Assembly (NCBI GenBank): GCA_002811645.1
Contig: PDIP01000082.1
Span: 112,580 to 176,579 of the forward strand
Source of the DNA: Corallochytrium limacisporum Hawaii
Taxonomy: Eukaryota > Protista > Pluriformea
Direction: 5' to 3'
DNA: 64,000 nucleotides
Both the position numbers and the translations under genes were made by a program. The notes beneath the pieces were generated by a model. That model saw nothing but the letters and a program-made list of their open reading frames with translations, was not told the origin of the DNA and did not search any database. Of this stretch, positions 9,760 to 49,400 are shown piece after piece (positions within the stretch are counted from its first letter, which is position 1; the number at the start of each line of letters is the position of its first letter).

Positions 9760-11441
9760 CCCTCCCTCCCTCCTTCCACCTCACCGTGGCTGGGATACGG
9801 CTGAAGGTAGGCGATCAGCGGCCCAAAACAAAGGAAAAAAAGAGAGAGAGAGAAAAAGGGAGCTAAATTTTACTTCTCTTGGGAGTTATTTTCTTAAACT
9901 TCCCGCTTCCCAAGATCAAATTTTTTCCAGTTCTTTTATTATCGAAAATGGTGGAACACACGATCGCTCAGACCCCAAAATGGAAGGAATGATAGGAGAA
10001 ATGCAGCAGAAACCACGGTGGAAATTTTTTCTTATCCTCCCCGCTCTCGTACCATTCAAGAGAAAGAAGAGAAATTTTTCTCGGCTCCCGCGACCCTCTC
10101 TCCGTACTTTTAGTACTGCACACATTTGAATCAGAGCAGCACTGCAACACTTCGAGCGGTACCAGAGCAAGAGAAAAACGCGGGCCGGCCCTGCGCTGGA
10201 CGGACTCACAACCGAGGAGCCGGGAACCGGGGAGGACAGTGCGGGGCAGTAGAGGAAATGAAACCTGGACAGTAAAAGCCCAAAGGGGACGATCCGATCC
10301 AAGCGAGCGATAGAGAGCTGGAGCCCGGGAGCAAAGGCGAGGGAAGAAAACGGTTAGGGGGGAGAATTGGGCAGGTAAAAGACGGGACCTTGAGAGCCGA
10401 GAGCGCCCATGCCCGCCTACTACTCCCACCGCAAAACCAAACCAAACCAAAAAGAATTTTAAAAGGAAAGAAAGAAAGAAAGGGGGGAGGAGCATATGAA
10501 TATTAGCAAGCAAAAAAGGGAACGAAGAAAGAAGAAGAAGAAACAGGAAAAAATGTAGTTCAGTTTTGTTTTTTTTTATTTTTCTGCATAGCCCCGGTGT
10601 GTGCTCACGGGGCAATCCCAAGGCCAGGTATTTTTAACCCCAAGAGCGGGTCAGGATAAAGGCGAAAAAAGAAACGAAAAAATACACGACCAGAACTGGC
10701 GATTTGCCAGCGCCCCGCACGGGGCCAAAAACCCCGGGGCTTGGGGGCGGGAGGACACTGGGAAGAGCGATGGGAAAGAGAAAAAGTCCCAAGGGTCCAA
10801 ATTTAATCGGGGCGGGACACCCTTTGCGGGGAGAAAAGCCTCGTGCCCGGTCCACACACCATTTCGACAGGATCACGGAAAGAGATGGATTGTTGCGATG
10901 GTAATTTGATAGTAAATGTACTGAAGTGACATTCCTAATTTGATAGCCTCTGCCAAAAGTATCGCACCACTGTGTTTTTTTTAGAGCGCGCTACCTCTGG
11001 TGGGACCTTCCCCCCCCCCTACCGCCCAAACCTCCTATGCCCCCGACCGTGCCTTTGCACAGTTTCTACTGGCAGTACAAAAAGTATAGAGAAAAACAAC
11101 TTACCACGGGCGTACAAGAATAGTGCCTTGGGGTCAGGTTCCGGTCAGCAGAGGCCAAGTGGCGAAAACGGAGGGTGAGGTCCCGAGACAGGCAAGTTGT
11201 GCTCGGGTCGGTGGATCCGTCCATTGAAGAATGCAGCATGCAAAACAAAGCATCAAAGACCTAACAGAGGCTGGACGTGAACGTAAATTCACCTACGTCA
11301 CCTCCATGTGCATCACGTTGACGTTGAATGACACATCGTGAGCTGCCTGCCTTTGGAATCGCGAACCACTCCCCAAAGATGTGTGCCGGGGGTTCGGGAC
11401 AGACCCGCACTTACACACACACCCAAAGAGAGAAGAGACAC

Positions 11442-11452
11442 AGAGAGAGAGA

Positions 11453-11505
<53 letters not shown>
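11442..11505. repeat. (GA)n microsatellite
   Basis: About 30 near-perfect GA units, read directly. Confidence 0.95.
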
Positions 11506-12707
11506 TGAGCAGTGGTGGTCGGGGAGGAGGGGAGAGTTTGGTGGTGGGCGAAAGGAGGAGAAGGAGAGCGGGCGGAGTGGCAAGGCGACGGATGATGGCC
11601 CTTTCTAACCGGAGGCCAATCAATTGGCTTGCTGCCCTTTGAAGGCAAAAAAAAAAAAAAACCGACAAGGGAGAAGTAACTGACGCATGCGCGCGAGGAG
11701 ATTACGGCGGAAACCGGTGGAGGGGGAAGGGTAGAGATACGGCGGAAGGCGAAAATTGGGAGCCCATTATGTACTGATTGAGTACAGAACGGGTGGTGTA
11801 GATAAAACCGTTCGGGCAAATGAGAGGAGGCGATTGGAGACGGTGACACCCAAATGAGAGGGGCTGAGGGGCTTTATCTGCCGCAGTTGGTAGTGCAAAT
11901 GTACTGAAGTATTGGAGAACCGTGTATCGGGCTGAACGGACCCCGTTGCATGTAAATCGGTGGGAGGCGACGGGAGTTGATGGTTGTCATAATCACATCG
12001 ACGACCTCATCATTAGGATCTGCTGTATCTGCGGCGAAGTGTGCGCACAATAATGTGGTTAAAGAGCTGGTGAAACGGGTCTGGCGATCTCTTCCTGTGT
12101 GTCGCAAAACTTGATCATTGGGATTGTGAACATTCGGACTGTGCTTGAAGATAAGGTATGGGTAGTGTTGATATTCTCAAGACAAGAACCACAGCCGCAG
12201 AGGAATCTGTTATATCATAAGAATAATCTCTTCTCGATCCTGGAAGCATGCATTCTGGAACATGCTCGGTAGCATGGACTTGTCCTGGGAACTATGCTAC
12301 CGCCTGACTTATCTTATTTCCTACATCCATCAATGGATGTCCGTGCGTACCTTACGGTGACTTCCCCAGCTCGCTATTGTGGAGGAAGGGGGGGTGACGA
12401 CCGGACGGTATTTTGGCTGTGCGCAGGAAGGTTGGAGGGAGAAGACCCCGGGGGGAGGGGGTTGGCTTTCAAATTTTCGCGCCGGAAAAGCCAGTCTTGC
12501 CCACTTGCGTGTGCACGTAGGTTCCAAACTGGACAACCAAATATTTGAACTGTGTACATACTTTATAAACCCTCCCCAACCCACCCGGGGGGGGGGGGTA
12601 GGGGGGGAACTCCTTCATCTCGGAAAATTGGTGGGGGGGGAGAGGTCGAATTCAGTATACGGAATTGATTGTGGCATTTCGGGCCCATTCCGCACAGAGT
12701 CTCGACT

Positions 12708-13661
12708 TCACTCTCCCTTGCGCTTCTTAGCAAGTTCCTGGGCCATCGCATCAAAGGCCCTTGCAGGGTCACCGCTGACAAAGCGACCAGCTAGAACAGT
12801 GGTTTCTTCGTCGTTGGCTTTGTTCATGCCTTCGCGGTAGCCGATGTTTAGTAACTGTTTGCCATGGACCAAAGAATCTGTGGGGTACTCGGCAATTCGG
12901 TCGGTGATCTTCTTCAATTCTTCCTCGAACTTGTCATCATCAAATACTCGACTCACCATACCAGCCTGATGCATTTCCTCGGCAGTCATGATCTTGCCGG
13001 CGAGTAGGACATCGCCGGCAATTTGACGACCCATGATTCTCGGAAAGGTAAAGGACGACGTACCTTCCGGCGCAAGGCCAAGCTTCATGAATGGTGCACT
13101 CATGTATGCCGAGCGTGTCGCGTAGATCATGTCAAAGGTACCTAGAACTGCTGCCATGATGCCAATCACAGGACCGTTCATACCACAGATCAGAGGTTTG
13201 GAGAAGTTGCCAAAGGCCCGGGCCATCTTTGCGGAACCATTTGCGATTGTAGACCGCGCATGGTGATACGCCTCGCCGGGCGTGCCATCATACTTGGCAG
13301 CACTGTACAAAAGACCATCTGGCTCAGATGCCTGATTTACGTCTGCTCCTGTTGACAAGAAGCGACCCGTGCCACGGAGGACCAGGCACTTCACTCGCGG
13401 GTCCTGATCCGCGTCCCGCAGCATGGCACTGGTTTGGTCATACATCTCCCACCGGATAGCATTGCCTTGCTTTGGCCTGTTCAAAGTCATGGTTGCAATC
13501 CCGTTAGGAGCTACATCGTAGAGAATTTGATCTTGCGCGTTTTCCGCAACTTCTGCGGAGCTTGCGTACGACCTTGCTGCAACCAAACCGCCAGCCACTG
13601 GCCTGAAGCTCTGGGCGCTGATTCTACGACCCGCAGTCGGGACAAGTTTCGTTACCAACAT
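12708..13661 (-). CDS. Crotonase-family enoyl-CoA delta isomerase (ECI2/Eci1-like), predicted mitochondrial
   Basis: Motifs TLNRPKQGNAI, FLSTGAD, FSKPLICGMNGPVIGI and APFMKLGLAPEGTSSFTFPRIMG. The N-terminus looks like a presequence (…ARSYASS). Confidence 0.85.
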   Translation of the reverse strand: MLVTKLVPTAGRRISAQSFRPVAGGLVAARSYASSAEVAENAQDQILYDVAPNGIATMTLNRPKQGNAIRWEMYDQTSAMLRDADQDPRVKCLVLRGTGRFLSTGADVNQASEPDGLLYSAAKYDGTPGEAYHHARSTIANGSAKMARAFGNFSKPLICGMNGPVIGIMAAVLGTFDMIYATRSAYMSAPFMKLGLAPEGTSSFTFPRIMGRQIAGDVLLAGKIMTAEEMHQAGMVSRVFDDDKFEEELKKITDRIAEYPTDSLVHGKQLLNIGYREGMNKANDEETTVLAGRFVSGDPARAFDAMAQELAKKRKGE

Positions 13662-14747
13662 GATTCAATCTAGTTCAGCTTTCTACCGATCTACAGACCG
13701 TTTACTTCAACATTACACGCAACCACCGGAACGCCCACACGACTTTCCCTTCAAATACGTGGCACACTGGCCGGACGATCTAAAAATAAAATGGTGTTCC
13801 ACGGTCACCGCAAGCGCCCCCCCCCCCTCCCCCCCCTTCTCCCTTTCGTCTGTCGTTTTCATTCCCTGTCCAACCAAACCTCCCTCGGGATCTATTAGCA
13901 ATGTCCGGTACTTCGATCATATGCACAACACTGGCCGGTGGGATTGAGTGCATGAGAGGTGAGACCGCAGGTGCCCTACTGGGTCCCAGGAAGACCTTAC
14001 TGCTGGCCCGGCAAATACGGCTGCGTAATCATTCGACGAAGCCACCGGTGGTACTGAAGGGCATAGTGGAGAAGACACCATAGTGAAACTATGGAATCTG
14101 GTCGGTACCCCCCTCCTTTTTTTTCTCGTTGTGCCTCCCACCCCCTCTCCGTTCCGTGCGGAAAGAAAATGGGAGTCCAGTTTCAATGGGGGGCACAGCC
14201 AATAAGTGTTCCAGTTTTCTTGTTGAGTTTGCGGGGTCCGTAATATTTGGCTCTTTCGAATACCGCTCGTGATATTTGTGGCCAAGGTGTCCGTTTTTGG
14301 TACCCAAGCCATAGAAAAGCAGGATTGGAATATTCCGGGCAGCTTTTGGCGCAAACAAGGGAACAGAATCAAAAATTGGTACATTCACTATAGGAACCAT
14401 GGCAGGCACCGCACCCGAAAGATTCCGCGAAATGTCGTACGCGTGGAGTGGAAGCCGAAGCCCAAAACGCCGCGAAGAATTTCAAAAGTAACGTGCAAAT
14501 CGCAAGTACGCCTCGGGGTCTCTTGACTCTCGCGCTTTCGCTGCGCAGCCACCAGGATAATATGGCGCTGAGTTCTTGAACATGCGCGAGCAATTTCTTC
14601 TTTGGTGCTTTCGTGAACATGAACTATGGAACATGATAGGTTAAGAAACAAAAGGTACTTTAAACAGGAACACTCATCAACAGTGGGCTTGTCAGCTTGG
14701 TGACTACGCAATGGTTTTCAGGTTTAAGTGAAATACAAGCATTCAAC

Positions 14748-15644
14748 ATGCCCGAATCTACTGCAGAAAAGAGCACTGATGCTTCCGGCAAGCGTACTGT
14801 TCTCGAAGTGGACGCAGACACCGATCGGTTCAACGAAGTTCTTCGGGAAAACTTGCCGCAATACATGATCAACTGCCTCGTCGCTGCCGGTTTTGATAGC
14901 GAGGAACTGATTTCCAGTCTCCGGGTGCGGCCTCTACGCGGCACAACTTCTGATGATGATCTTGCTGCTATTGAAGACTACGTGGAGGAAGCTCTTCGTA
15001 ACGATAAGGAATACACCGGTCCCACCCCCATTCGTGATGGTGTGCCGTTCCGATTCTTGATCGGCCACCGCAGGAAGCTCGCCCTGTTTGTTATGCACTT
15101 GCAGCAGAAGAATGCAGCGTCCTTGCGCAAAAAGAGGCGCGGATTTTCTAGTGGCATATCTAGTCATGGTGTAACGACTGACCCTGATACCATGCTGGCT
15201 AGGCTAAGTGACGCGCTCGGTATCTGGTGCGTGAAGCAGAAGGAAGACCGCCTGCGCTATCTGGTGGAAGGCCGTGACTACCAGGTACAGATTAAGACAC
15301 AGAAGGGACGAAGTGAAGCTCGCTGCTTGTGCAACCACTGCAACAAGAGTTTCTTGTTGTCCACATCCGGTGACCGGTCGGTTCCAATTATATCAAATTT
15401 CACCAAGCATATTAAGGGCTGCAGCGAATACATTCTCAACTGGCAGAACGAAAACTTCGGCAAGACGGGCGGTAAGGACGGTGAGGCACCCACCCCTGCA
15501 GTGCCGAAATATGGACCCCAGGGAACAGACAAAGAGCCGGGTGAGAAGGAACCTGGAACCCCAGCGAAGAGCACCCCCGCTAAACCAACTCAAGGCTCCA
15601 CGGCTACCCCAACCAGAAAGGGCGTCAGTTCTTTGCCACCTTAA
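14748..15644 (+). CDS. SAM-like domain plus CxxC...H-x3-C zinc finger protein
   Basis: LPQYMINCLVAAGFDS...FRFLIGHRRKL is SAM-like; CLCNHCNKSF...ISNFTKHIKGC resembles a BED/C2HC finger; P/T/K-rich tail. First ATG is at 14748. Confidence 0.7.
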   Translation: MPESTAEKSTDASGKRTVLEVDADTDRFNEVLRENLPQYMINCLVAAGFDSEELISSLRVRPLRGTTSDDDLAAIEDYVEEALRNDKEYTGPTPIRDGVPFRFLIGHRRKLALFVMHLQQKNAASLRKKRRGFSSGISSHGVTTDPDTMLARLSDALGIWCVKQKEDRLRYLVEGRDYQVQIKTQKGRSEARCLCNHCNKSFLLSTSGDRSVPIISNFTKHIKGCSEYILNWQNENFGKTGGKDGEAPTPAVPKYGPQGTDKEPGEKEPGTPAKSTPAKPTQGSTATPTRKGVSSLPP

Positions 15645-15819
15645 ACCCGAAATAGGATATCAATATCACTTTCCAAACAGGATATAGTCCCATCACACAT
15701 CGTTATACATCTATCCATGTTCGATTTTGCTCACATGTTTGAGCATCTTGTTCATGTCCTCTTGCAAGTCATGGAACATCTCAAAACGAGTCATGGCCAA
15801 TTGTATTTAGATTATTGCA

Positions 15820-18477
15820 TTACGCCGATTGTTCGGTCATAGATGTGTAGGAGAGAGCATTCTTAACAGCCACATCGACAATGTTGTGGGCAGTCCTTTC
15901 GTTCTCCTTTTGTTCCTGCTTCTTAGCTTTGGACTGTTCTTTTCGCTCTTTGGTTTTAGCTTGACGCTCTCGCTTTTCCTTCAACTTGGCCTCCTTGGCA
16001 GCCTCCTTGGCCTCTTTCTTATCGTCAGCCTTGGCCTCCTTCTTGTCCTCTGCCTTGATGTCCCTCTTGTCGTCGGTGTTTACATCCTTCTTGCCGTCCT
16101 TTTTCGCGTCCTTCTTATCATTGTTCTTACCGTCCTTTTTGGCGTCCTTCCTGGCATCTTTCTTGTCGTCCTTCTTGTCTGCCTTCTTCTCGGGTTTGAC
16201 ATCCTTCTTCTCGGGTTTGACATCCTTCTTCTCAGGCTTGCTGTCCTTCCTGTCCGACTTACCATCCTTCTTTCCCTTTTCCGGTTTCCTGTCTTCTAAC
16301 TTAGACTTTCCATTGCCATCCTTACCCTTCTTCTTTTCATTGTTGCCGTTGCTTCCGTTATCTGCTTTGGGCGGACGAAAGAGAACAGGTGCAGCGTTGG
16401 ACCCGATGGTCGAAGGGAAGGATGTGTCCTTTTTGTTGCGACCACCTTTTGTACCATCATTGACGGCCCTTTCCTGGCCCTTCTTGTTCTTGCCCTTTCC
16501 GTCCCTAGTAGGTGGTGCGTCTTCCTTGAAAATTTTGCCTTCCTTGACATTTCCAACGACCATCACGGTGGTGGCCGTGATACCGCCCGTCTGACCAGGT
16601 GCACGAACTCGTACTTGTGTTACCATCTCATCCTTTGGACCATCTTTACCAAAGCCTGGGCGCACCTTTCCCCCACTCTGTAGCCCTTGGTCTTCCTTGG
16701 TTTTCTTTGTATCCTTTGTTCGGCGTTCGTTTATGACATCACGAAGATCCTTATCGTTACCACGTTGATTTTGCCCTTGACCAATCCGCCCCTCGCCGTT
16801 TGCTTGCTCCTCGACAACATCATTATTGACTTCGTCATCCTGGCTCTGACCACCTTTGCGGGGCTCCCAAGGTTCTAGCATTCCCATTGAGATGTAGTGT
16901 TCCAGAATCTCCGGCTTGGTCAAGCCAAGGATATCCTGTGCCTCACGCACGGTCGCATAGTAAAGCTGGACTCGTCCAAGCTCATCGTAATACTCCAGCG
17001 GCAGACGCAGGTGGCCTTGCGCGTCCTTGTATGCCTTGTAGGGGTTGGCAGGCACTTCTTGACCCGCATCCAGTGCACGGTCGTTGATACCCATGGATCC
17101 TGATCCAGCTCCATAACTACCATCGTTGCTGTGTGGTCCGTAGCTGCCCCCGACATCCAAGGATTGATCGTTCAGACCCATTCGACCACCCGGGCCAGAT
17201 AGGCCACGTCCCGGATCCTGCCCGTAATTAGCACGTCCAGCGACATCTCCTAGGTTGTTCTGAACTCCGACACCGTACGGAGCTTCATACCCCATGTCCT
17301 GGTACACGTCCGGCATGCCACCGTCTGAGACTGGGAACGACTGCTGGCGGGCTGCTGTGAGTCCCGTCTCGAGTAGTCCATTGTCGATCATGGGTGTCGG
17401 TGTCATCCCCATAAAATCTGATCGGTACTGCTGGTTATCTGCTTGTGGCTGGAAACCAAATCCAGCACCCTGTGCTGCACCCATGCCAAAAGTCATTCCA
17501 AAATTTGCCGCAGGCCAACGCGCATTCATGGCAGTGTTCGCCGGATATCCGTAGCTTTCTCGCTGGCTTACTGATTGCCAGTTGTTCTGCTGGAAATTGT
17601 TCCACTGGCCACCAGTATTACCCACATCATTTCCGTAGAATTGATTGTTGGGAACTTCTTGGTCATTCACATCCTTGCCCATGTCGTCATTTTTGGTACC
17701 CTGCATGTCGTTCGCTTCCTGACTCGGATCATCTTGACGTTTCCTCTGCGCAGCTGCCCGTGCCCCCCAATCATCAGTTTCATTAGATGCATTGGCATTT
17801 ACCCGTGACGGGCTACGCTTAGCGTCCTTGCTGTTCCCTCCTTGCATTGCGTTGAATTGAGGAGGCATCAAAGGCAGCGGCATGTTCGGATCGAAACCTC
17901 CGCTAAGAGGTGCCGCAAGGATGCTTGAGGTTGCATCCTGCAAGAAGCTGTCAATGTGTTGCTGAAATTCTGCGTCAACGGTCGGAGGAATAAGTGGGGC
18001 CGGAGGATTTGTATTCTTTCCTGTTCCGCCATTGCTTGATCCAGTCGTCGCTCCGCCCGCTGCTTGAACGTCAGAATCCTTTGTTGTCGCAGTCGTAGCG
18101 TTCTCCAAACGCGCACTTGATAAGGTAGCTGTTCCCTGCCCCCGTAGTGCACTGGCGTACGAACCCATGCGTCCCGAAGACCCCGATGAAGACGGTTGGG
18201 ATACAGCTCCCTGGCTAGCGGCAATGTTCGATCCCGAAGTTGACCGGGTAAACGAAGACGTGGCAGCACGGGCTGCGGTTGCTCCTGGGGTAGGAGGTGG
18301 ACCCAGAGGTGTTGTTCCCGCCCGGGAAGAACGACCACGGTAGGTACCGCTGGTTGGTCTTCCTCTGGATGCCGGTGCTCCGTAGCCGTCTCTTCGGTAC
18401 CCGCTCGCGGGCTTTGAACCGAAGCCGGAGCCAGGTCGCCCGCTGCTGGTCCTCGATGACCCTGGACCTGTATTCAT
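15820..18477 (-). CDS. Hypothetical 885-aa, largely disordered protein (RG/S-rich, Q/N/G-rich and KD-repeat regions)
   Basis: Long ATG-started ORF made of low-complexity blocks, with one short, probably folded island (NPYKAYKDAQG...MLEPWEP). Confidence 0.75.
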   Translation of the reverse strand: MNTGPGSSRTSSGRPGSGFGSKPASGYRRDGYGAPASRGRPTSGTYRGRSSRAGTTPLGPPPTPGATAARAATSSFTRSTSGSNIAASQGAVSQPSSSGSSGRMGSYASALRGQGTATLSSARLENATTATTKDSDVQAAGGATTGSSNGGTGKNTNPPAPLIPPTVDAEFQQHIDSFLQDATSSILAAPLSGGFDPNMPLPLMPPQFNAMQGGNSKDAKRSPSRVNANASNETDDWGARAAAQRKRQDDPSQEANDMQGTKNDDMGKDVNDQEVPNNQFYGNDVGNTGGQWNNFQQNNWQSVSQRESYGYPANTAMNARWPAANFGMTFGMGAAQGAGFGFQPQADNQQYRSDFMGMTPTPMIDNGLLETGLTAARQQSFPVSDGGMPDVYQDMGYEAPYGVGVQNNLGDVAGRANYGQDPGRGLSGPGGRMGLNDQSLDVGGSYGPHSNDGSYGAGSGSMGINDRALDAGQEVPANPYKAYKDAQGHLRLPLEYYDELGRVQLYYATVREAQDILGLTKPEILEHYISMGMLEPWEPRKGGQSQDDEVNNDVVEEQANGEGRIGQGQNQRGNDKDLRDVINERRTKDTKKTKEDQGLQSGGKVRPGFGKDGPKDEMVTQVRVRAPGQTGGITATTVMVVGNVKEGKIFKEDAPPTRDGKGKNKKGQERAVNDGTKGGRNKKDTSFPSTIGSNAAPVLFRPPKADNGSNGNNEKKKGKDGNGKSKLEDRKPEKGKKDGKSDRKDSKPEKKDVKPEKKDVKPEKKADKKDDKKDARKDAKKDGKNNDKKDAKKDGKKDVNTDDKRDIKAEDKKEAKADDKKEAKEAAKEAKLKEKRERQAKTKERKEQSKAKKQEQKENERTAHNIVDVAVKNALSYTSMTEQSA
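16182..16233. repeat. 21-bp coding tandem repeat (KKDVKPE) x2.5
   Basis: ccttcttctcgggtttgacat occurs at 16182 and 16203, with a partial copy at 16224. Confidence 0.9.
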
Positions 18478-41716: not shown

Positions 41717-44686
41717 ATGTTCAAACGAATCTTCGGCGGGACTACCCCTGAACACAAGGATCCCGACTTCTCAGAAGTCCAAACATATAAAGATCCTCCC
41801 CCTTATAACCCTCCAGACCTTGATTTGGACCGTATTCGTGTTATGGTATATCGGGATATTCCGAACCATGACCGCATTGTCCTGCTAGACTCTGATTACG
41901 GTGGACCAACAGGGCCCGAAGAACCGGAGCCGGAGCATTGCAAGGACAAGAACGCAGGAACAGGAGCCCAACGGCAGAATTCGCGATGGAAGTATGGTGC
42001 CAACGATGCCGAGCTGATCGGAGAAATGGTCTTTGGCACACTGCCACTGCACACAAAGGGTATGGCGGTCAAAATCCATCACCTTAAGAATCCCAATCGG
42101 ATTATGATCACGCGAATTTTTTCCATCCGACAGAAAGAAGCCGTCCCACAGGTGAGCAGGAATACGAGCCGGGTTCAGCTCCAAACCATCACTCTCGCAG
42201 AGGATGAGGCAGAGAACACTGGTGATTCATCGCAACGGTTCACTGTGACAACTAATTCGGAACAACAAGGAGGTAGAATATCACCAATGCAGGGAGGTAG
42301 AATCTCTCCGCTTGCAACTGTTGGCGCTGGCGTCAGCGAATCACGCGAGAGTACCTCCAGAAGAGGACTAGACTCCATTTTGGCAGATTTTAAGGCCCAT
42401 GCGGATGAAGGGCAGACTTTGAAACCCATCACTAAGGTCTCTCAACACAATTCTTCACCATCGCTGTCTTCGGAAAAGCCGATGAGTGAGACAGTCTCGT
42501 CAAACATGTCTTCCAGAGCAGCATCGCTCAAGGTTAAGGATGGCCAGCGGGTACGTAAGGATCCTGGTGCTAAAATGGGGTTCCATTCTCGTCGCATGGA
42601 CAGAGGCAAACAATTTAGTATCGAGTACGGAAGATTCCGCACAACCGTGGTGTCGTCCACAGGGAAGTCAGTAGAAAAGCGAACGACCAAAACAGCGCAG
42701 CCCAACAACCCCAGTGTAGCCCCGAAACAGGTGCAAGCCATCAAAGGAGCACTTGCGAAATCAAGTTTGAAACCCCCGCAAGTAGGGGTCACACAGCAAC
42801 GTCCTTCTCGTCATCGCCAGGTCCTGTACGGCATTGCGATCATCATTAACTTTATGGCAAAGGGCTCTGCCGATCATCCCCATCGTGAGCGCCCTAATCT
42901 CATTCTGTACCACCTGATCTTCAGTCACTACACATTGATTGATTTGCATTTGCATCAATTTCAGACTGCAATTGCCAGCGCGCTGTTGTTTGGAAGTGCA
43001 ACCGGACCCATCACGTCCACAACTCAATCGTTCGACAAACAGCTAACTCAGGGAAATGGGGTAGCCCGGCGCAGGCCGCGCATCGAACCATTTATGTTTC
43101 AGAATTCTGTGGAGCTTCTTAGAGGTGTTGCTGATGTGAAACAACAGGTGGTCCGCCTGTACCATATGGAGAGAATCTCGGACCCAGCTTGGTTGAATAT
43201 GGTGTCATTCCGGGGAACAGTAAGAAGAACTCAGACTCTTAAGGTCATGCAGACACTGGCACAGTTGATCCGGATGTACGACGGCAAGGGGCAGAAATAT
43301 TTCATTTCCAAAATCCTCACTGCCGTCCTACATTTTCATCTCGGCTGGGTACCAACCGTAGCACCGTCCAGCCACAAAGCCGCGGATCATCTGGAAAAGA
43401 GGCAGGTCGATCATTTGGAAATTTCGGGGAAGCTATTGCCATACTCTCCTCTATGGGCGCAACTGTGTGATCTTTACGGAAATGTGGGACCTCAGAATCG
43501 TCTGGCTCGAACACTGATTGTGGGCCGAGACGCAAATCTCATCAGGAAGATTCTTCATATCCTAACGTACTTTATCAGGTGCAATGAGGTGTTTGAAGAC
43601 GATTTCAAATTGGATGGGTTAGAACGTGGTGAATTTCTGAACCTTGACGAAGAGGTGGACAGCATGCATAGTAGATCCGAGGCAGAAGACACAGAACAGT
43701 TGACTTTGCATGCCACCGCTCAGATGGCCCAAGCAAGGGCAGCAGAAAAGCTGGCAGCAAAGATCGCAAGGGAGAAAACACTGCAGACAGATGGGTCGGA
43801 AGAAGTACCGGAGACATCACAGAGCAACTTAAGCCTAGATGTTGATGAGATTGACGAGTACATGCGAGATATCGATATTGCCGCCCGCATTCGCGCGTTG
43901 CCCGAAGACGACACCGATGACTCAGACAGTCAGGGCCTTGAGGCAATGAATTTGGTCGACCTACCCTTGCCGAAAACCACCAGAGTCAAGGAGCTTCCCA
44001 ATCCCAACAACCTGTCAAGTGGGCCCCATGATTCTCTCTATTCTACCAACACTATGATCAGTCGGCTCTTAGGCCGTAGTCTTCTCGGTGGTTACACTGA
44101 CGAATACGTTGCGGGTATGGTCATGATGGGTCTTCCACAGCTTGATGAAGAACGATTGGCCGTTGACTTGAAACATTCGCTGAAGTACAGCCTGATAGAT
44201 GAGCCGATTGATGAAGCCGTAGCGATCGTAGGGGACGCGGATAACTTCAACGTTCGCGTTTTGAGCACGGCGACGCACATTGGTGATCAGTCTAAGAAAG
44301 AGTCAAGCAACAGTGACCTCAGTGTGCTCCGCGTGGACGCAAGCAATTTCCTTGTCAAGAGTATGCAGACTTTCTTAAAGATGGTGCAGGTAGGCCTGGA
44401 TCCTACTCTCTGTCGCAGGTTTATTGAAGACAAGTTACGCGATGTTTATCATCGAAGCAAGGTCTTGGCTGTATATCTGGAAGGAAACCAGGAGGATGGA
44501 GCTGTCGATGCGCAGCGGATAACGCCTCAGAGTGTCTGGAAGCGGTTTGGATGGCCTGAAAGTGATTTCAGTCTTTACCTGACAGTTGCAAGCACTCATT
44601 CAACCGTTGCTCTAGAATACTTCCGCGATGTTGATCCCCACAAATGCGTCCCTGTGCCTGTGCCTGGATCGCCACGCCACCCTTGA
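41717..44686 (+). CDS. Folliculin-interacting protein (FNIP1/2, Lst4 family)
   Basis: IRVMVYRD...VLLDS, LIGEMVFGT...KIH, TAVLHFHLGWVPTV, PYSPLWAQLCDLYG, LTYFIRC, GRSLLGGY...Y, EPIDEAVAIVGD, VASTHS. Confidence 0.92.
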   Translation: MFKRIFGGTTPEHKDPDFSEVQTYKDPPPYNPPDLDLDRIRVMVYRDIPNHDRIVLLDSDYGGPTGPEEPEPEHCKDKNAGTGAQRQNSRWKYGANDAELIGEMVFGTLPLHTKGMAVKIHHLKNPNRIMITRIFSIRQKEAVPQVSRNTSRVQLQTITLAEDEAENTGDSSQRFTVTTNSEQQGGRISPMQGGRISPLATVGAGVSESRESTSRRGLDSILADFKAHADEGQTLKPITKVSQHNSSPSLSSEKPMSETVSSNMSSRAASLKVKDGQRVRKDPGAKMGFHSRRMDRGKQFSIEYGRFRTTVVSSTGKSVEKRTTKTAQPNNPSVAPKQVQAIKGALAKSSLKPPQVGVTQQRPSRHRQVLYGIAIIINFMAKGSADHPHRERPNLILYHLIFSHYTLIDLHLHQFQTAIASALLFGSATGPITSTTQSFDKQLTQGNGVARRRPRIEPFMFQNSVELLRGVADVKQQVVRLYHMERISDPAWLNMVSFRGTVRRTQTLKVMQTLAQLIRMYDGKGQKYFISKILTAVLHFHLGWVPTVAPSSHKAADHLEKRQVDHLEISGKLLPYSPLWAQLCDLYGNVGPQNRLARTLIVGRDANLIRKILHILTYFIRCNEVFEDDFKLDGLERGEFLNLDEEVDSMHSRSEAEDTEQLTLHATAQMAQARAAEKLAAKIAREKTLQTDGSEEVPETSQSNLSLDVDEIDEYMRDIDIAARIRALPEDDTDDSDSQGLEAMNLVDLPLPKTTRVKELPNPNNLSSGPHDSLYSTNTMISRLLGRSLLGGYTDEYVAGMVMMGLPQLDEERLAVDLKHSLKYSLIDEPIDEAVAIVGDADNFNVRVLSTATHIGDQSKKESSNSDLSVLRVDASNFLVKSMQTFLKMVQVGLDPTLCRRFIEDKLRDVYHRSKVLAVYLEGNQEDGAVDAQRITPQSVWKRFGWPESDFSLYLTVASTHSTVALEYFRDVDPHKCVPVPVPGSPRHP

Positions 44687-44886
44687 AGATGAGCATACAT
44701 AACAAATTGAACTACATGTTGCAATTCGCATGCATGAATCTGACAACTGCGTTTTGTGAACTATCGACAAGGAGCTAACCCCGTCCCCGCGAGTGGACAC
44801 TGTCGAGAATTCCATCGCGAAAATGGAGAATGTACTAAAGAGCTAGATGTACAAGTTGAAAGTGTTATTTGTTAAAAACTGTATTT

Positions 44887-46413
44887 TTAAATATCAGAGT
44901 CCACAAATCGGTTCTGGTAAACTTCATGGACTGAATCCGGGATCGCCTTTTCAGATTCCAGCTTACTGAACTCTTCTTCACTGAGTATATGGAAATTCTT
45001 GCGAGTACACACATAATGAATTAGCTCGCCAGTCATGGGTGAAGTGACAGGAGCAATGGTGGCTTCACACGTCAGTGCCTGGCCATTTTTACGTCGGCCA
45101 ATGAGGAGACCATGCCAAGGCTCTTTCAGAGCGCTTTTGATCGCGGCTTGTTGCAGTGCTGACTTATACAGAGGACACAGATGGCAGCCTCCGATGCTCA
45201 CCGCTCGCTTGCCAACTACTTCGTTGAATGTGTATCCCATAACAATCTCCCATGTATGGTCTACATATATAAGTGTGTGGTCAGGGGCAATCATCTCAAC
45301 ACTGAAGAGAGTCGCCGCGGACGCTTTGTTCTTTACGCTTTCGTTTTCCCCTGCCAGAAGACTGCGTTGCTCACTGAATTTCTTTTCCCGACTCTGAGCC
45401 TCACGAATGAAGTCAGCAGCACGCTTAATGAGCTCATGTCGAGGCAAAGGTTGTTTACCATCATTTGCGCCAGGCAAGGTTAGGGCAAGCTCCTTAATAC
45501 TCTTTTGCAGCTTCTGACGGCTCCGTTCCTCGGCTGCTTTATGGCGTTCCATTCGTCCCTGTTTCGGTTCTCCAGCTGTCCGCTTTTTGGCTTTCTTGGG
45601 AACGTCCTTGGTCTCTGAGTCCCCTTCATCGTCAACAGTTTCTTCGGTATTTTCACGCTTACGTGTGATGTTGGGAGTGATCACTGGGAGATTCATGTTT
45701 TGGAACATCTGCTCGCGTTCCTTGGCACCTTCGTCATGAGTGTCGCTGGGACTGTCGGCATTTTCCTCGTCATTCTCCGAAGGCACAGGATCCGGCTTAT
45801 CATTGTTGCTACTTCTGTCTAGCTCCGAGAAGAAGTTCCAGAAGCGCTCCTCATCATTTTGAGACTCCCTGTCGTGCAACCTCAAGGTGCTTTGGATTGT
45901 GTCCCACACAGGGGCGGCAGCGCCCGGCTCAGACAAAGCCACTGCCTGAGAGGCCCACGCATTTGCTGCTACATCATCCAGAATATTGCCAATGTCACCA
46001 GACAGGGTACCATCATCGACAGCATTAGTGCTGAAACGGTTGTTCACGTTGTGACGAATAAATGGTTCGCCAGCAGAGCACACTAGCATTTGCCCCGGTG
46101 GGAGAAACTCGAGGTCGTCAATGAGCACACCCAAATCAGTATATAGTCTTGGCACCGATCCTGCAGGGAGACTTTCCTTGTAAACGTGTTCCCAGCTTCT
46201 CTTGGCAGCCTCTTCAAGACTCAGAGAAGTATCGATGCGGAATGTACGAGCTGAACGCACATCAAACGTGCCATCATTCTTGAGTAGGGTTACAAAGGTT
46301 AGTGGAGCCATCGAAGACCGCTCTGTGGACACAGGCGACAGAAGGCTGTTGTGAGGCGAAGAGCTGTCCATTATTGCACTCTCTACTTGACCACCATTCA
46401 AAATGGAAACCAT
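44887..46413 (-). CDS. Doublecortin-like (beta-grasp) + bHLH-leucine zipper + PAS domain transcription factor
   Basis: DCX-like VTLLKN...RLYTDLGVLIDDLEFLPPGQMLVCSAGEPF; bHLH RHKAAEERSRQKLQKSIKELALTLP...HELIKRAADFI plus zipper; PAS LIYVDHTWEIVMGYTFNEVVGK...WHGLLIGRRKNG...IHYVC. First ATG is at 46413. Confidence 0.8.
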   Translation of the reverse strand: MVSILNGGQVESAIMDSSSPHNSLLSPVSTERSSMAPLTFVTLLKNDGTFDVRSARTFRIDTSLSLEEAAKRSWEHVYKESLPAGSVPRLYTDLGVLIDDLEFLPPGQMLVCSAGEPFIRHNVNNRFSTNAVDDGTLSGDIGNILDDVAANAWASQAVALSEPGAAAPVWDTIQSTLRLHDRESQNDEERFWNFFSELDRSSNNDKPDPVPSENDEENADSPSDTHDEGAKEREQMFQNMNLPVITPNITRKRENTEETVDDEGDSETKDVPKKAKKRTAGEPKQGRMERHKAAEERSRQKLQKSIKELALTLPGANDGKQPLPRHELIKRAADFIREAQSREKKFSEQRSLLAGENESVKNKASAATLFSVEMIAPDHTLIYVDHTWEIVMGYTFNEVVGKRAVSIGGCHLCPLYKSALQQAAIKSALKEPWHGLLIGRRKNGQALTCEATIAPVTSPMTGELIHYVCTRKNFHILSEEEFSKLESEKAIPDSVHEVYQNRFVDSDI

Positions 46414-49400
46414 AATGCTGATATCGTACCTGCCCGTACAAGCCGTACTTGCTTTGGGTTCGACAAAACATGGAAAATTCTGTGTTATTGATCTGCCCCT
46501 GAAGACCCAAATACCATTTTTCCTGACTGACAACTGGTGTACTTTATGGAAAATTTATTTGTGCAAAGAGCAATCGGCACTTCACGCAAACACCACTATT
46601 TTCTCGACATTTACAAGTTGCGCAGGTCGACCTCACGTCAACATTCCTACCAACAAGAATATTGAACGAAGCTGCCCCAAGGGGGGGGGGAGGTGGTGTC
46701 CAAAGAAAGGGCAAAGGAGTACAATTCCCAAATTGTTTTGTGTCAGCGAAGAGTTTGAAAATCCCTGGCCGTTGGCCCCCCCCCCCCCCCGGGAGGCTCC
46801 CCAGGGAACGGGTACACAGTAGTGATTACGTACATTCCGCAAAAAAACAAGCCACACCAACGGAGAAAACTGCCCTCCCCATCGAGATTTTTTTGAAGTT
46901 TTTCTTCACGTCCTTCGATCTTATGCCCGCGAGTACTGTGACATCCTTTCTATAGTCATTCTATGGGGGAGTGAGGGTGCCATCTTTTTTGTGAGCCGGT
47001 CAGGAGCTCGCACCGTCCGATGCGTTCGATGACTCTCTTGGTTTCTCCGCTTTGTTCACATTTGCAACGGGTATACGTTTACTATAAGGTGCACCTCCGC
47101 AATAACTGGTCAGCCGCCTTCCAATGTGTAGAAATTTTTGCCGCTCGTGCCGAATCACGCAAAAACTCTATGCGCGAACAATAGGACAACCACAAGCGGC
47201 CGGAGCCACACTACTAACCAAGAAAGGAGGGAAACCATTGGCCATACGTGCCGCTCCATATTAATGAAGATAGGAGCCGAGAAATGATAGTCCATTGGAC
47301 ATGCAAAGAATGCGCTACATCGAAAACACCTCCCCCCTCCTTCGGGGCGGGGGGAGGGGGGGGGGGAGAGGCTGGAACTCTGGGCAAGGGAGTCTTGCGG
47401 GGTCTCAGCCACAACGAGCGAAACGTGTGCTGTAGATGCAAGGGATCTGCGGCAACACCTTCGAAAGTGTCATCATCCAGCGGCTCGCTTATTGGACATC
47501 CATAAACTGTCCCCAAAGCGTGCATGTAAGCATGTTCTTCTAGCATGTCCCTCCGAGCGGGCGATTCGCCACCAATCCAAGACTCTACTCTTCGGGCGCT
47601 CACAGCGACACTGTCTGATCAGTTTGGCTCGTTTTCGCCTCACCAGTCTTCAACGCGTGCCAATTTTACCTCGCGTCCAAGCGCAAAAACCATCGTGTGC
47701 GTCACGGGACGCTTTTGGTCAAACTGCCGGGGTTTCACTATTGGAAAAGAGAACACAGAGAAAAACACCTTGAAAAAAAAATCGTGCGGGTTTCCTACTG
47801 AGTTCTCCACATCAGCGAGAACGGTCTGGTGACGCTTTGCTTCTGTTTCAGTTCCTTCTGTAGTTTACGACTTGCAGAGCATTCGTTTTCTCACACGCAT
47901 GCACGCCATGCGCATGAAGAACTCATCTCTTAGCGGACCCGACGCGTCTTGCGCTTGCGTAGAGGGCCTCCAGGCCCGGTTTGTCGAAGGGACCGACCCT
48001 TCTTCGTTGATGCGCTCTAGATGAAGGTTCGAGACCCTCCCGAACCCATGTCTCCCTGAATCAACTATTTGAAATATATCGAATCAAATGGAAATGGAAT
48101 ATAGTATATATACAATGCATTGATTTCATTTTTGTTCACTGAGGGACGTGCTCTGAAATCCAATTTCACAATTTGGGGAACAAAAAGTCATAGGAAAAGA
48201 TGGCCTGATCGCAAAAAAATTTTGATCTCTATTTCTATATGATTCCAAATATATTCTTAAATCTTTGGGGTCCTTGACCACATGTTTTTGTGGTCCATCG
48301 GTCCCGCAACTTTTGAGTGGTGCTGCCAGTGTATCTATAGTTGCGAGCGGTAATTTTTCCGGCCTAAAGATCAGCACACACCATGGACACAAGTGTGCGA
48401 TCAGTCAGGAGACATCCTACAATCTACAGTTTCTCTATACAATACTACATTTGTAGATAGCGTTCACCATGCCCACGGCGCAACGAGATTGAAACGCATT
48501 GAGGCGACCATCATGGCATGGGGATATCGATGTGGTGACAGCATTGCCACAACAAACGTAAATTATGAGCGGGCAGCTCGGTGGTAAGAGTCAAAGTAGC
48601 ACTATGATCCTCGGACACGTCTGTACAGTCGTTCGCCAAGAAGACTCTAAAACGTCACTGTTCATCGGGACGCCGTGTCGTTCCGTATTTCTCTGTTTTT
48701 GCGAGTTTGTGTTTGTTGTGAGGTATGTGTGTGGGACCGTGCACACCCATACCCAATGGAGGCCATTTGCTTTTCAACCAGCTGTGTGATTTACGGGAGT
48801 GGTCGGCCAAGACCATGCCCGTTTTTGGAATGCTTGCAGCTAAAGCTCCTTTTATCTTGTGCCATCTGACCGTTCCTTAAGCACATCTTAACCCCAAGTG
48901 TATAATCGAGGGAAAGACGGCAGCACTAAGCGGTGGAATCGGCAAGACTTCTAATCTAACCACCTTTCTATCCATGCAAAGGCATTCCTATCCCCCCTGA
49001 ACTTCATCTCTTGTTCATCATCGTCCACGAGAATTCAGATGCACATTGCTTGCACAAAAACCTCGTGTGTTGATGTGCTTCCGCTCATGCCCAGGTCTAT
49101 CGTATTTCTTATATGATGTTCTAGCTCCCCGCCCCCCGGGGGGGGGGTTCCTATACCTCACTGAGACGAGATATAGTCGACATTTCCGCACCAGGCAAAG
49201 CAAGACATCCGGAAGCATGTTACATCATTGGAGATCCATGAGCAGATGTAAATACACCGAAGAGGCAATGCAACAACCTGCGCTCCATGAAATGGACACC
49301 ACCCCTCTCCCCCCCGGGGGGAAGGGAGGAGGGGCACCGGATCTCTGACCTAAGGATGCAACAATATGGAAGGACTCTTCCGAATATGTCAGGATTGCAT

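What the first reader, a model, noticed from the sequence alone, without database searches (positions are those of the whole stretch)
44887..46413. Doublecortin-like + bHLH-Zip + PAS fusion: a candidate one-component sensor transcription factor with an unfamiliar architecture
Seen in sequence: one intronless ORF with three modules. (i) A DCX/KHA-type beta-grasp signature (V.L.KN ... RLYT..G..I.DL..L..G..LV.S.GEPF, ~46296-46054). (ii) A bHLH with the H-x3-E-x3-R basic pattern (HKAAEERSR) followed by a zipper (~45555-45325). (iii) A single C-terminal PAS/PAC resembling signalling-type PAS (~45310-44990). Established: H-E-R marks class-B (Myc/Max/USF/MITF-type, CACGTG-binding) bHLHs; animal bHLH-PAS proteins have tandem PAS-A/B and no zipper; DCX domains typically bind microtubules. 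Inference: this is an independently assembled bHLH-PAS that could be tethered to microtubules or oligomerise through the beta-grasp domain and be switched by a PAS ligand. I do not recall this three-domain combination.
Basis: partly seen in the sequence, partly recalled or inferred. Interest (0 to 1): 0.8.

Follow-up and report, generated by a model that had tools for sequence, protein, structure and literature searches.

The report
Doublecortin-like bHLH-PAS transcription factor
This intronless, apparently expressed gene encodes a transcription factor that joins a doublecortin-type fold, a Max/Myc-like DNA-binding domain and one sensor-type PAS domain with a conserved cysteine pair; I found no published description of its family, which occurs in single-celled relatives of animals and was not detected in animals themselves.

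Summary

- **bHLH.** It keeps the H-E-R residues and is closest to Max, Myc, USF and MITF.
- **PAS.** The single PAS descends from the flavin-binding lineage (NifL, MmoS, LOV). It has lost the flavin-binding residues and carries a conserved CxxC at the start of helix F.
- **Family.** Orthologs with the same layout occur in Syssomonas, five ichthyosporeans and Capsaspora. This genome, probably Corallochytrium limacisporum, has seven copies, and the N-domain occurs nowhere else in it.
- **Earlier finds.** The scan met paralogs of this gene before on other DNA of the same genome (s1-573247, s1-558408). This copy is a typical member that keeps the cysteines.
The domain is acidic (pI 5.2) and solitary, so microtubule tethering is doubtful and partner binding or oligomerisation is likelier. 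A bHLH with a single PAS is already known in protists.
- **Verdict.** A new variant of a known kind, of moderate to high interest.

The parts
44887..46371 (-). Coding sequence of the DCX-like bHLH-PAS transcription factor (494 aa plus stop; ATG 46371).
   Evidence: ORF. Public model P0001 is 494 aa. Transcript-like contigs cover 44925/44936-46377, colinear, with no joints. 7 of 9 strain SNPs are synonymous.
46054..46302 (-). N-terminal DCX-type beta-grasp domain (strand-strand-helix-strand-strand).
45682..45708 (-). Conserved short linear motif in the disordered linker (MFQNMNLPV; pattern hydrophobic-F-x-N-hydrophobic-x-hydrophobic-P).
   Evidence: It aligns in at least 12 of 15 family members although the surrounding linker is unalignable. 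Function is inferred only.
45580..45597 (-). Basic cluster KKAKKR just upstream of the bHLH, a candidate nuclear localisation signal.
   Evidence: Sequence. The NLS role is an inference.
45313..45564 (-). bHLH: basic region with H5-E9-R13 (HKAAEERSR), helix 1, loop, and helix 2 running on as one 43-residue helix (weak zipper, a-positions F/L/V/A) to within 2 residues of the PAS.
   Evidence: AF2 helices 9-37 and 50-92. The family profile hits Max at E 4.6e-15, then Myc, USF2, Pho4 and MITF. The target alone hits MITF at E 4e-4. 14 of 15 family members hit Pfam HLH. The target alone scores only 10.3 bits.
44986..45306 (-). Single PAS domain of the flavin-PAS lineage (PAS_9 type).
   Evidence: PAS_9 E 3.6e-5. 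NifL PAS1 E 7e-8 by sequence. The family profile hits MmoS at 1e-18 and NifL at 2.7e-13. AF2 gives the canonical PAS topology. Foldseek finds NifL, Aer and LOV at E 4e-9 with TM 0.77-0.84 by target.
45175..45186 (-). CxxC motif (CHLC) at the N-cap of PAS helix F.
   Evidence: Translation. Both Cys are present in 10 of 10 ortholog-type sequences and in 0 of 5 divergent paralogs. It sits just before helix 139-153 of the model. It aligns to the LOV 'PxTD' loop.
45067..45069 (-). Cys on PAS strand H (LTCEAT), at the position of the flavin-binding Asn of LOV domains.
   Evidence: HMMER alignment to the CagFbFP LOV domain. Conserved in 8 of the 10 ortholog-type rows of A3; one of the other two has a gap there.

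Best explanation
The gene encodes a nuclear, dimeric bHLH-(weak zipper)-PAS transcription factor.

Shown:
- It belongs to a family conserved in unicellular holozoans: Corallochytrium, Syssomonas, ichthyosporeans and Capsaspora.
- It has three folded modules plus one conserved linker motif.

Inferred from H5-E9-R13 and the Max/Myc/USF/MITF-like bHLH: it binds E-box sites of the CACGTG type as a homodimer, or as a heterodimer with one of its paralogs.

Inferred from the continuous helix 2 that runs straight into the PAS: the state of the PAS domain is passed to the DNA-binding helices, as in aureochromes and bacterial PAS-coiled-coil sensors.

The PAS descends from flavin-binding PAS domains but has lost the flavin-contacting residues. 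Its conserved CxxC at a helix N-cap, plus a pocket Cys, is the best candidate for a redox- or metal-sensitive switch. This is a hypothesis.

In this genome the N-terminal DCX-type beta-grasp occurs only in this factor family. It most likely acts as a protein-protein interaction or oligomerisation module rather than a microtubule binder. This too is an inference.

The confidence given here blends about 0.85 for what the gene is (architecture and family) with about 0.35 for the proposed mechanism.
For: Architecture and family:
- Searches support the three modules.
- Orthologs with the same layout come from seven other holozoan species.
- Seven paralogs carry the N-domain in the genome. The N-domain profile hits nothing else there, and Pfam DCX hits only this ORF.

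Expression and constraint:
- Transcript-like contigs cover all three modules in one piece.
- Strain differences are mostly synonymous.

bHLH class:
- E9 and R13 are invariant in the family.
- Max, Myc, USF2, Pho4 and MITF are the best solved matches.

PAS:
- NifL, MmoS, Aer and LOV are closest.
- The flavin triad of PMC10468136 is replaced by A/V/I, Q/E and G/S in the alignments.
- CxxC is conserved 10 of 10.

N-domain role:
- The domain is acidic, pI 5.2.
- Structural ties to the oligomerising CIDE-N fold are as strong as to DCX.
Against: - On the target alone the HLH hit is very weak (10.3 bits), and its zipper heptads are poor.
- No DNA-binding, ligand, redox or oligomerisation data exist.
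- The DCX sequence signal (Pfam, Foldseek 3Di+AA) leaves tubulin binding possible.
- The runs laid are only guessed to be RNA.
- Absence from animals and choanoflagellates rests on one single-sequence exhaustive search with a long-branch query.
Confidence: 0.55

Rival explanations
1. The N-terminal domain is a working doublecortin domain that tethers the factor to microtubules, and a PAS signal releases it to the nucleus.
For: Pfam DCX passes its cut-off on the isolated domain. Foldseek's first six hits are DCX domains, including tubulin-bound TgDCX. DCX families dominate the Atlas fold rows.
Confidence: 0.15
2. The PAS senses nothing. It is a second dimerisation or partner-selection surface, as largely in ARNT, and the CxxC is a structural zinc or disulfide site.
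For: The flavin triad is lost. Five paralogs in the same genome lack the cysteines yet keep the PAS. Seven or eight paralogs suggest a combinatorial dimer network.
Against: CxxC is strictly conserved across lineages that diverged very long ago (10 of 10 ortholog-type sequences). The motif sits at a helix N-cap, the classic position of reactive thiol pairs (plus established knowledge of thioredoxin-type motifs). A further Cys replaces the flavin-binding Asn inside the pocket.
Confidence: 0.3
3. The N-terminal beta-grasp is a generic ubiquitin-like domain that links the factor to the proteasome or to ubiquitin-binding partners and sets its turnover.
Against: Sequence evidence points to DCX and DCDC1, not to ubiquitin. 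UBL matches rank below DCX, CIDE and ELMO. No diglycine tail is present, and I did not check for a hydrophobic-patch signature.
Confidence: 0.12
4. It is an ordinary member of the animal-type group C bHLH-PAS (ARNT-like) that lost PAS-B, so it is nothing new.
For: ARNT, BMAL1 and EPAS1 chains match the family profile at E 5e-9 to 1e-7 across the bHLH and the start of PAS-A. The literature counts a Capsaspora bHLH-PAS as group C (PMC5064789, PMC5800844).
Against: Max scores higher on the bHLH alone (58.9 against 39 bits). Bacterial-type flavin PAS domains score far higher on the PAS (70.7 and 53.1 bits). There is a single PAS, and the N-terminal DCX-like domain is absent from animal proteins. 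The nearest Atlas cluster is the diatom HLH+PAS type.
Confidence: 0.08

Closest known systems
Protist single-PAS bHLH-PAS proteins (RITMO1/bHLH1a of Phaeodactylum and relatives; Annunziata et al. 2019, PMC6600994)
   Same: A bHLH followed by one PAS, a short C-terminal tail and an N-terminal extension of variable length. By Atlas features the bHLH-PAS half here is nearest a diatom HLH+PAS cluster (0.95, 193 of 256 shared).
   Different: Here the extension is a folded DCX-type beta-grasp conserved across holozoans. The PAS has a CxxC motif. Orthology to RITMO1 was not tested, and no rhythm function is implied.
Animal group C bHLH-PAS (ARNT, BMAL1/CLOCK, HIF, AHR)
   Same: The bHLH is joined directly to a PAS, the factors are dimeric, and paralogs suggest partner choice.
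   Different: Animals have tandem PAS-A and PAS-B and no N-terminal beta-grasp. This bHLH is closer to Max, Myc, USF and MITF, and this PAS is closer to NifL, MmoS and LOV.
Doublecortin family (DCX, DCLK1, DCDC1/2, Toxoplasma TgDCX)
   Same: Beta-grasp fold with the 'NDG ... RLYT.lG.e ... VVS.GE.F' pattern. Pfam DCX is over its cut-off on the isolated domain, and DCX domains are Foldseek's top hits.
   Different: A single, acidic copy fused to a DNA-binding domain. Only part of the profile is matched, and tubulin binding is untested and doubtful.
FAD/FMN-binding PAS sensors (NifL PAS1, MmoS, Aer, LOV; aureochrome and White Collar-1 as transcription-factor examples)
   Same: These are the closest sequence and structure relatives of the PAS. 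Aureochromes give a precedent for a zipper-type factor controlled by a C-terminal LOV/PAS.
   Different: The three flavin-contacting positions (R/W, C/H, N; PMC10468136) are A/V/I, Q/E and G/S here. A CxxC is gained at the F-helix N-cap.
CIDE-N and PB1 beta-grasp oligomerisation modules (DREP/CIDE; PB1 of plant ARF and NLP factors)
   Different: There is no sequence match to CIDE-N or PB1 profiles. Self-association was not tested.

Membership tests
bHLH (Pfam HLH, PF00010) | Profile match over the curated cut-off (20.7 bits) | tested here: inconclusive
   The target scores 10.3 bits. Six of the seven paralogs scanned score 25-39 bits. 14 of 15 family members hit at E<=0.01. The family profile hits Max at E 4.6e-15. 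Membership is clear for the family, but this copy is the most diverged.
bHLH (Pfam HLH, PF00010) | Basic helix, loop, second helix | tested here: met
   AF2 helices 9-37 and 50-92 with a 12-residue loop, pLDDT 88-95.
Group B (Myc/Max/USF/MITF-type, CACGTG-binding) bHLH | H5, E9 and R13 in the basic region | tested here: met
   HKAAEERSR. E9 and R13 are invariant across the 21 rows of A2; H5 is kept in the target and in most rows, but not all. DNA specificity itself was not tested.
Group B bHLH-Zip | Leucine heptads after helix 2 | tested here: inconclusive
   Helix 2 continues to residue 92 of the model. Read by eye on the alignment, the a-positions are F/L/V/A in the target and L/I/L/M in Syssomonas. 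The target has a roughly 15-residue deletion here.
Animal group C bHLH-PAS | Tandem PAS-A and PAS-B after the bHLH | tested here: not met
   Only one PAS, with 32 residues after it.
Animal group C bHLH-PAS | bHLH and PAS closest to ARNT/CLOCK/HIF/AHR | tested here: not met
   Max 58.9 bits and MmoS 70.7 bits against ARNT 39 bits.
PAS fold | Five-stranded sheet with the C, D, E and F helices; profile match | tested here: met
   AF2 topology. Foldseek E 4e-9 with TM by target 0.77-0.84. PAS_9 scores 24.4 bits in the target (cut-off 27) and 34.3 in paralog L002. NifL E 7e-8.
Flavin-binding PAS / LOV | Conserved flavin-contacting triad (R or W; C or H; N), PMC10468136 | tested here: not met
   The aligned positions are A, Q and G in the target, and V/I, E and G/S in orthologs.
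Doublecortin domain (Pfam DCX, PF03607) | Profile match over the cut-off (22 bits) | tested here: met
   23.7 bits on the isolated domain, 23.6 bits in the six-frame scan, but 20.0 bits on the full protein. Only profile positions 22-60 of 60 are matched. 5 of 15 relatives hit Ubiquitin_DCDC1 weakly. The result is borderline.
Doublecortin domain (Pfam DCX, PF03607) | DCX-type beta-grasp fold | tested here: met
   pLDDT 90.9. DCX domains take Foldseek ranks 1-6. By VIA Z (8.2-9.4) DCX is not separable from CIDE-N or ELMO RBD.
Doublecortin domain (Pfam DCX, PF03607) | Microtubule or tubulin binding | not testable with these tools
   The only proxy is charge: pI 5.2 in the target and 4.1-8.0 in the family, which argues against it.
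RITMO1-like protist bHLH-PAS | Single PAS, N-terminal extension, short C-terminus | tested here: met
   The architecture matches the description in PMC6600994. The nearest Atlas cluster is a diatom HLH+PAS one.
RITMO1-like protist bHLH-PAS | Phylogenetic placement within the algal clades | not tested

The most novel reading that the evidence does not exclude
The family is an ancestral holozoan one-component redox, oxygen or metal sensor. In this reading a flavin-PAS was remodelled into a thiol-based switch (CxxC at the F-helix N-cap plus a pocket Cys). That switch directly gates a Max-like bHLH, while a DCX-derived beta-grasp polymerises or docks the factor. The system was then lost on the lineage to choanoflagellates and animals, where other sensor-type factors do comparable jobs. 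It would also mean that a 'premetazoan bHLH-PAS' such as the one reported in Capsaspora may not be an ancestor of animal group C.
Probability: 0.2. Interest if true: 0.8.

Novelty: new variant of a known kind. Interest (0 to 1): 0.62.

Why it matters
bHLH-PAS factors run oxygen, xenobiotic and clock responses in animals. Their premetazoan history is argued from a single reported Capsaspora bHLH-PAS gene, and I could not establish whether that gene is the Capsaspora member of this family.

This family shows that unicellular relatives of animals share a different bHLH-PAS design. It has a Max-like bHLH, one flavin-lineage PAS with a conserved cysteine pair, and a doublecortin-type domain. That design was expanded to seven copies in this compact genome and was not detected in animals.

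It offers three things:
- A tractable candidate for a direct redox- or metal-sensing transcription factor. Transfection tools have been reported for Corallochytrium (title of bioRxiv 10.1101/2020.11.12.379420; paper not read).
- A non-cytoskeletal use of the DCX fold.
- A test of whether bHLH-PAS arose once in holozoans.

Tried and rejected
Searches that led nowhere:
- The word-index search with the whole protein found only the protein itself.
- With the family alignment it was swamped by bacterial PAS proteins and did not even recover known members.
- With the N-domain region it found only self.
- These three blanks say nothing about distribution, which rests on the exhaustive search.
- A search for the ortholog locus tags in papers found nothing.
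- The Capsaspora transcription-factor paper (PMC4342549) is not held.

Analyses that did not resolve anything:
- The maximum-likelihood tree of the bHLH-PAS region was largely unresolved, with long branches. I draw no orthology or order of events from it beyond best-hit similarity to Syssomonas.
- The N-domain profile against PDB sequences gave TRPM5 at E 1e-3 above doublecortin at E 0.43. I treat the TRPM5 hit as chance, because the fold searches do not show it.
- The Atlas feature search of the N-domain gave only KHA at 0.76, which is below the useful range.

Readings considered and rejected:
- A LOV photoreceptor or FAD redox sensor: the flavin triad is absent.
- A heme-PAS: no match.
- An ordinary ARNT-like protein: see the rival explanations.

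Full report
**Setting**

The window has about 50% G+C and long intronless eukaryotic ORFs. It is piece C267 of a 24,109,830-base assembly in 286 contigs. That size matches the 24.1-Mb Corallochytrium limacisporum assembly, for which the same paper infers about 0.0 introns per kb of coding sequence (PMC5560861). The best ortholog of the target is from Syssomonas, which I recall as a close relative of Corallochytrium. I therefore take the organism to be C. limacisporum. The convergent neighbour at 41717-44686 (+) is a clear folliculin-interacting protein.

**Observation**

One open frame runs 44887-46533 on the minus strand.

On the full protein every Pfam hit is below its curated cut-off:

| Pfam family | Bits | Cut-off |
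|---|---|---|
| PAS_9 | 24.4 | 27 |
| DCX | 20.0 | 22 |
| HLH | 10.3 | 20.7 |

The single sequence was therefore not enough, and the case rests on relatives and structure.

**Relatives**

A six-frame search of the genome found paralogs with the same order of modules on contigs C232, C185, C212 and C45, and two on C238. A further bHLH-PAS on C111 lacks the N-domain. Several of these pass the Pfam HLH and PAS_9 cut-offs.

The exhaustive search of 1.84 billion representatives gave 29 proteins at E<=1e-10. The best are full-length look-alikes from these species:
- Syssomonas multiformis (E 2.5e-52)
- Chromosphaera perkinsii
- Creolimax fragrantissima
- Capsaspora owczarzaki (CAOG_08129, named only 'BHLH domain-containing protein')
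- Amoebidium parasiticum
- Sphaeroforma arctica
- Ichthyophonus hoferi

A few environmental sequences also match. Below them the list is bacterial multi-PAS kinases. No animal, choanoflagellate or fungal protein appeared. This was one single-sequence search with a long-branch query, and only 150 of 650 hits were shown.

**N-terminal module**

An alignment of 15 N-termini (A1) shows the pattern VTLF.NDG ... A(K/R).F ... RL(Y/F)T.lG.E ... VVS.GE.F.

- Scanned alone, the target segment reaches 23.7 bits on Pfam DCX, above the cut-off of 22. Five relatives touch Ubiquitin_DCDC1.
- AlphaFold2 on A1 gives a confident strand-strand-helix-strand-strand beta-grasp (pLDDT 90.9).
- Foldseek's first six PDB hits are DCX domains (Toxoplasma TgDCX, a human DCX domain), followed by CIDE-N domains with DCLK1 and human doublecortin a little lower, then USP UBLs.
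- DCX families fill five of ten rows of the Atlas fold search, beside KHA, YukD and CIDE-N.

The fold is therefore certain, and the DCX assignment rests on sequence as well as shape.

Within the genome, the A1 profile hits only the seven bHLH-PAS genes, and Pfam DCX hits only this ORF. The core domain is acidic: pI 5.2 in the target and 4.1-8.0 in the family.

**bHLH**

- The basic region HKAAEERSR keeps H5, E9 and R13. E9 and R13 are invariant in the 21-row alignment A2.
- The target alone is closest to MITF, USF2, Myc and TFEB.
- The family profile hits Max at 4.6e-15, then Myc, USF2, Pho4 and MITF. ARNT, BMAL1 and EPAS1 follow only at 5e-9 to 1e-7.
- In the model (pLDDT 85.9) helix 2 continues for 43 residues, to two residues before the first PAS strand.
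- Heptad a-positions are weak in the target (F, L, V, A) and better in orthologs. The target has a short deletion here.

**PAS**

The model has the canonical PAS order of strands and helices. The closest structures are NifL PAS1, Aer and many LOV domains (E 4e-9 and up, TM by target 0.77-0.84). By sequence, NifL scores 7e-8 for the target. For the family profile, MmoS scores 1e-18 and NifL 2.7e-13.

According to PMC10468136, flavin-PAS domains keep R/W, C/H and N at three contact positions. In the HMMER alignments the family has A/V/I, Q/E and G/S there. Canonical flavin binding is therefore not expected.

The family has cysteines instead:
- A CxxC (CHLC, 45175-45186) sits immediately before helix F. 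Both cysteines are present in all ten ortholog-type sequences and in none of five divergent paralogs.
- A Cys on strand H takes the place of the flavin-binding Asn (8 of the 10 ortholog-type rows).
- A fourth Cys, on strand I, is variable.

A CxxC at a helix N-cap is the classic setting of reactive thiol pairs and of shared zinc sites (established knowledge). Whether it works so here is untested.

**Expression and constraint**

Two public runs of 2015 hold the locus. They look like transcriptome assemblies for four reasons:
- They hold 13-14 Mb in 10,000-17,000 records.
- Their contigs are gene-sized.
- Adjacent genes differ 3.6- to 7.5-fold in contig depth.
- Nothing covers 46506-48500.

They are nevertheless only guessed to be RNA.

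One contig per run covers 44925/44936-46377 without joints, so all three modules lie on one molecule with no intron. Both end at 46377, six bases before ATG 46371. This favours the 494-aa model over ATG 46413. They stop 36-47 bases short of the stop codon, which I cannot explain.

The second run is another strain. Of its nine differences in the ORF, seven are synonymous, including all four in the N-terminal part.

**Comparison with what is known**

- bHLH plus a single PAS with an N-terminal extension is described in diatoms, Nannochloropsis, dinoflagellates, ciliates, Guillardia and Monosiga (PMC6600994).
- The bHLH-PAS half of this protein is nearest a diatom HLH+PAS cluster by Atlas features (0.95; a lead, not a test).
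- A Capsaspora bHLH-PAS has been counted as group C, and 'bHLH-PAS evolved only once in holozoans' has been proposed (PMC5064789, PMC5800844). I could not check whether that gene is CAOG_08129.
- Four full-text searches found no paper that joins a doublecortin-type domain to bHLH-PAS or that names the orthologs.
- The scan itself met paralogs of this gene before on other pieces of this genome (s1-573247 and s1-558408). The follow-up on the former reached the same family-level reading, which I reached independently before seeing it. The copy here is a typical member that keeps the cysteine site.

**Verdict**

The architecture claim is right, the microtubule-tether idea is doubtful, and 'independently assembled bHLH-PAS' is overstated.

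The gene is a member of an apparently unnamed holozoan DCX-bHLH-PAS family, a new variant of a known kind of factor. The mechanism is inferred, not shown: an E-box-binding dimer, a PAS thiol or metal switch, and a beta-grasp partner or oligomerisation module.

Noticed in passing
window 45682-45708 (-): Short motif MFQNMNLPV (hydrophobic-F-x-N-hydrophobic-x-hydrophobic-P) is conserved in at least 12 of 15 family members inside an otherwise unalignable acidic linker. It could be an activation, export or docking motif.
   Followed up: partly
window 44843-44924 and 44887-44936: Neither transcript-like run covers the 82 bases between the convergent FNIP and bHLH-PAS contigs. The bHLH-PAS contigs stop 36-47 bases before the stop codon, so the 3' end of the mRNA is unclear.
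   Followed up: no
window 46506-48500: No contig from either run lies on the first 2 kb of the roughly 5-kb gene-free stretch upstream of the gene. That is unusual in so compact a genome (compare the first-reader note s1-559998).
   Followed up: no
window 41717-44686 (+): Intronless 989-aa folliculin-interacting protein homolog (FNIP_M E 4.5e-51, FNIP_C 6.9e-32), convergent with the target. Its contig extends 156 bases past the stop codon.
   Followed up: partly
L006 706-2724 (-) and L007 589-2535 (+), both on G000 contig C238: Two closely related DCX-bHLH-PAS paralogs lie about 14 kb apart in divergent orientation. Their PAS is long and insert-rich, lacks the CxxC and is not seen by Pfam. They look like a recent local duplication.
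   Followed up: partly
L009 1743-3509 (+), G000 contig C111: An eighth bHLH-PAS paralog has no DCX-like domain. Its N-terminal half holds a long perfect (AQ)n repeat.
   Followed up: no
A1 profile against PDB: The N-domain profile hits the TRPM5 cytoplasmic MHR region at E 1e-3, better than doublecortin at E 0.43. No fold search shows it, so it is probably chance.
   Followed up: no
P0002, P0003, P0006 (orthologs): The Syssomonas, Chromosphaera and Amoebidium orthologs carry a third Cys seven residues after the CxxC (C-x2-C-x6-C) on helix F. The target lacks it.
   Followed up: no
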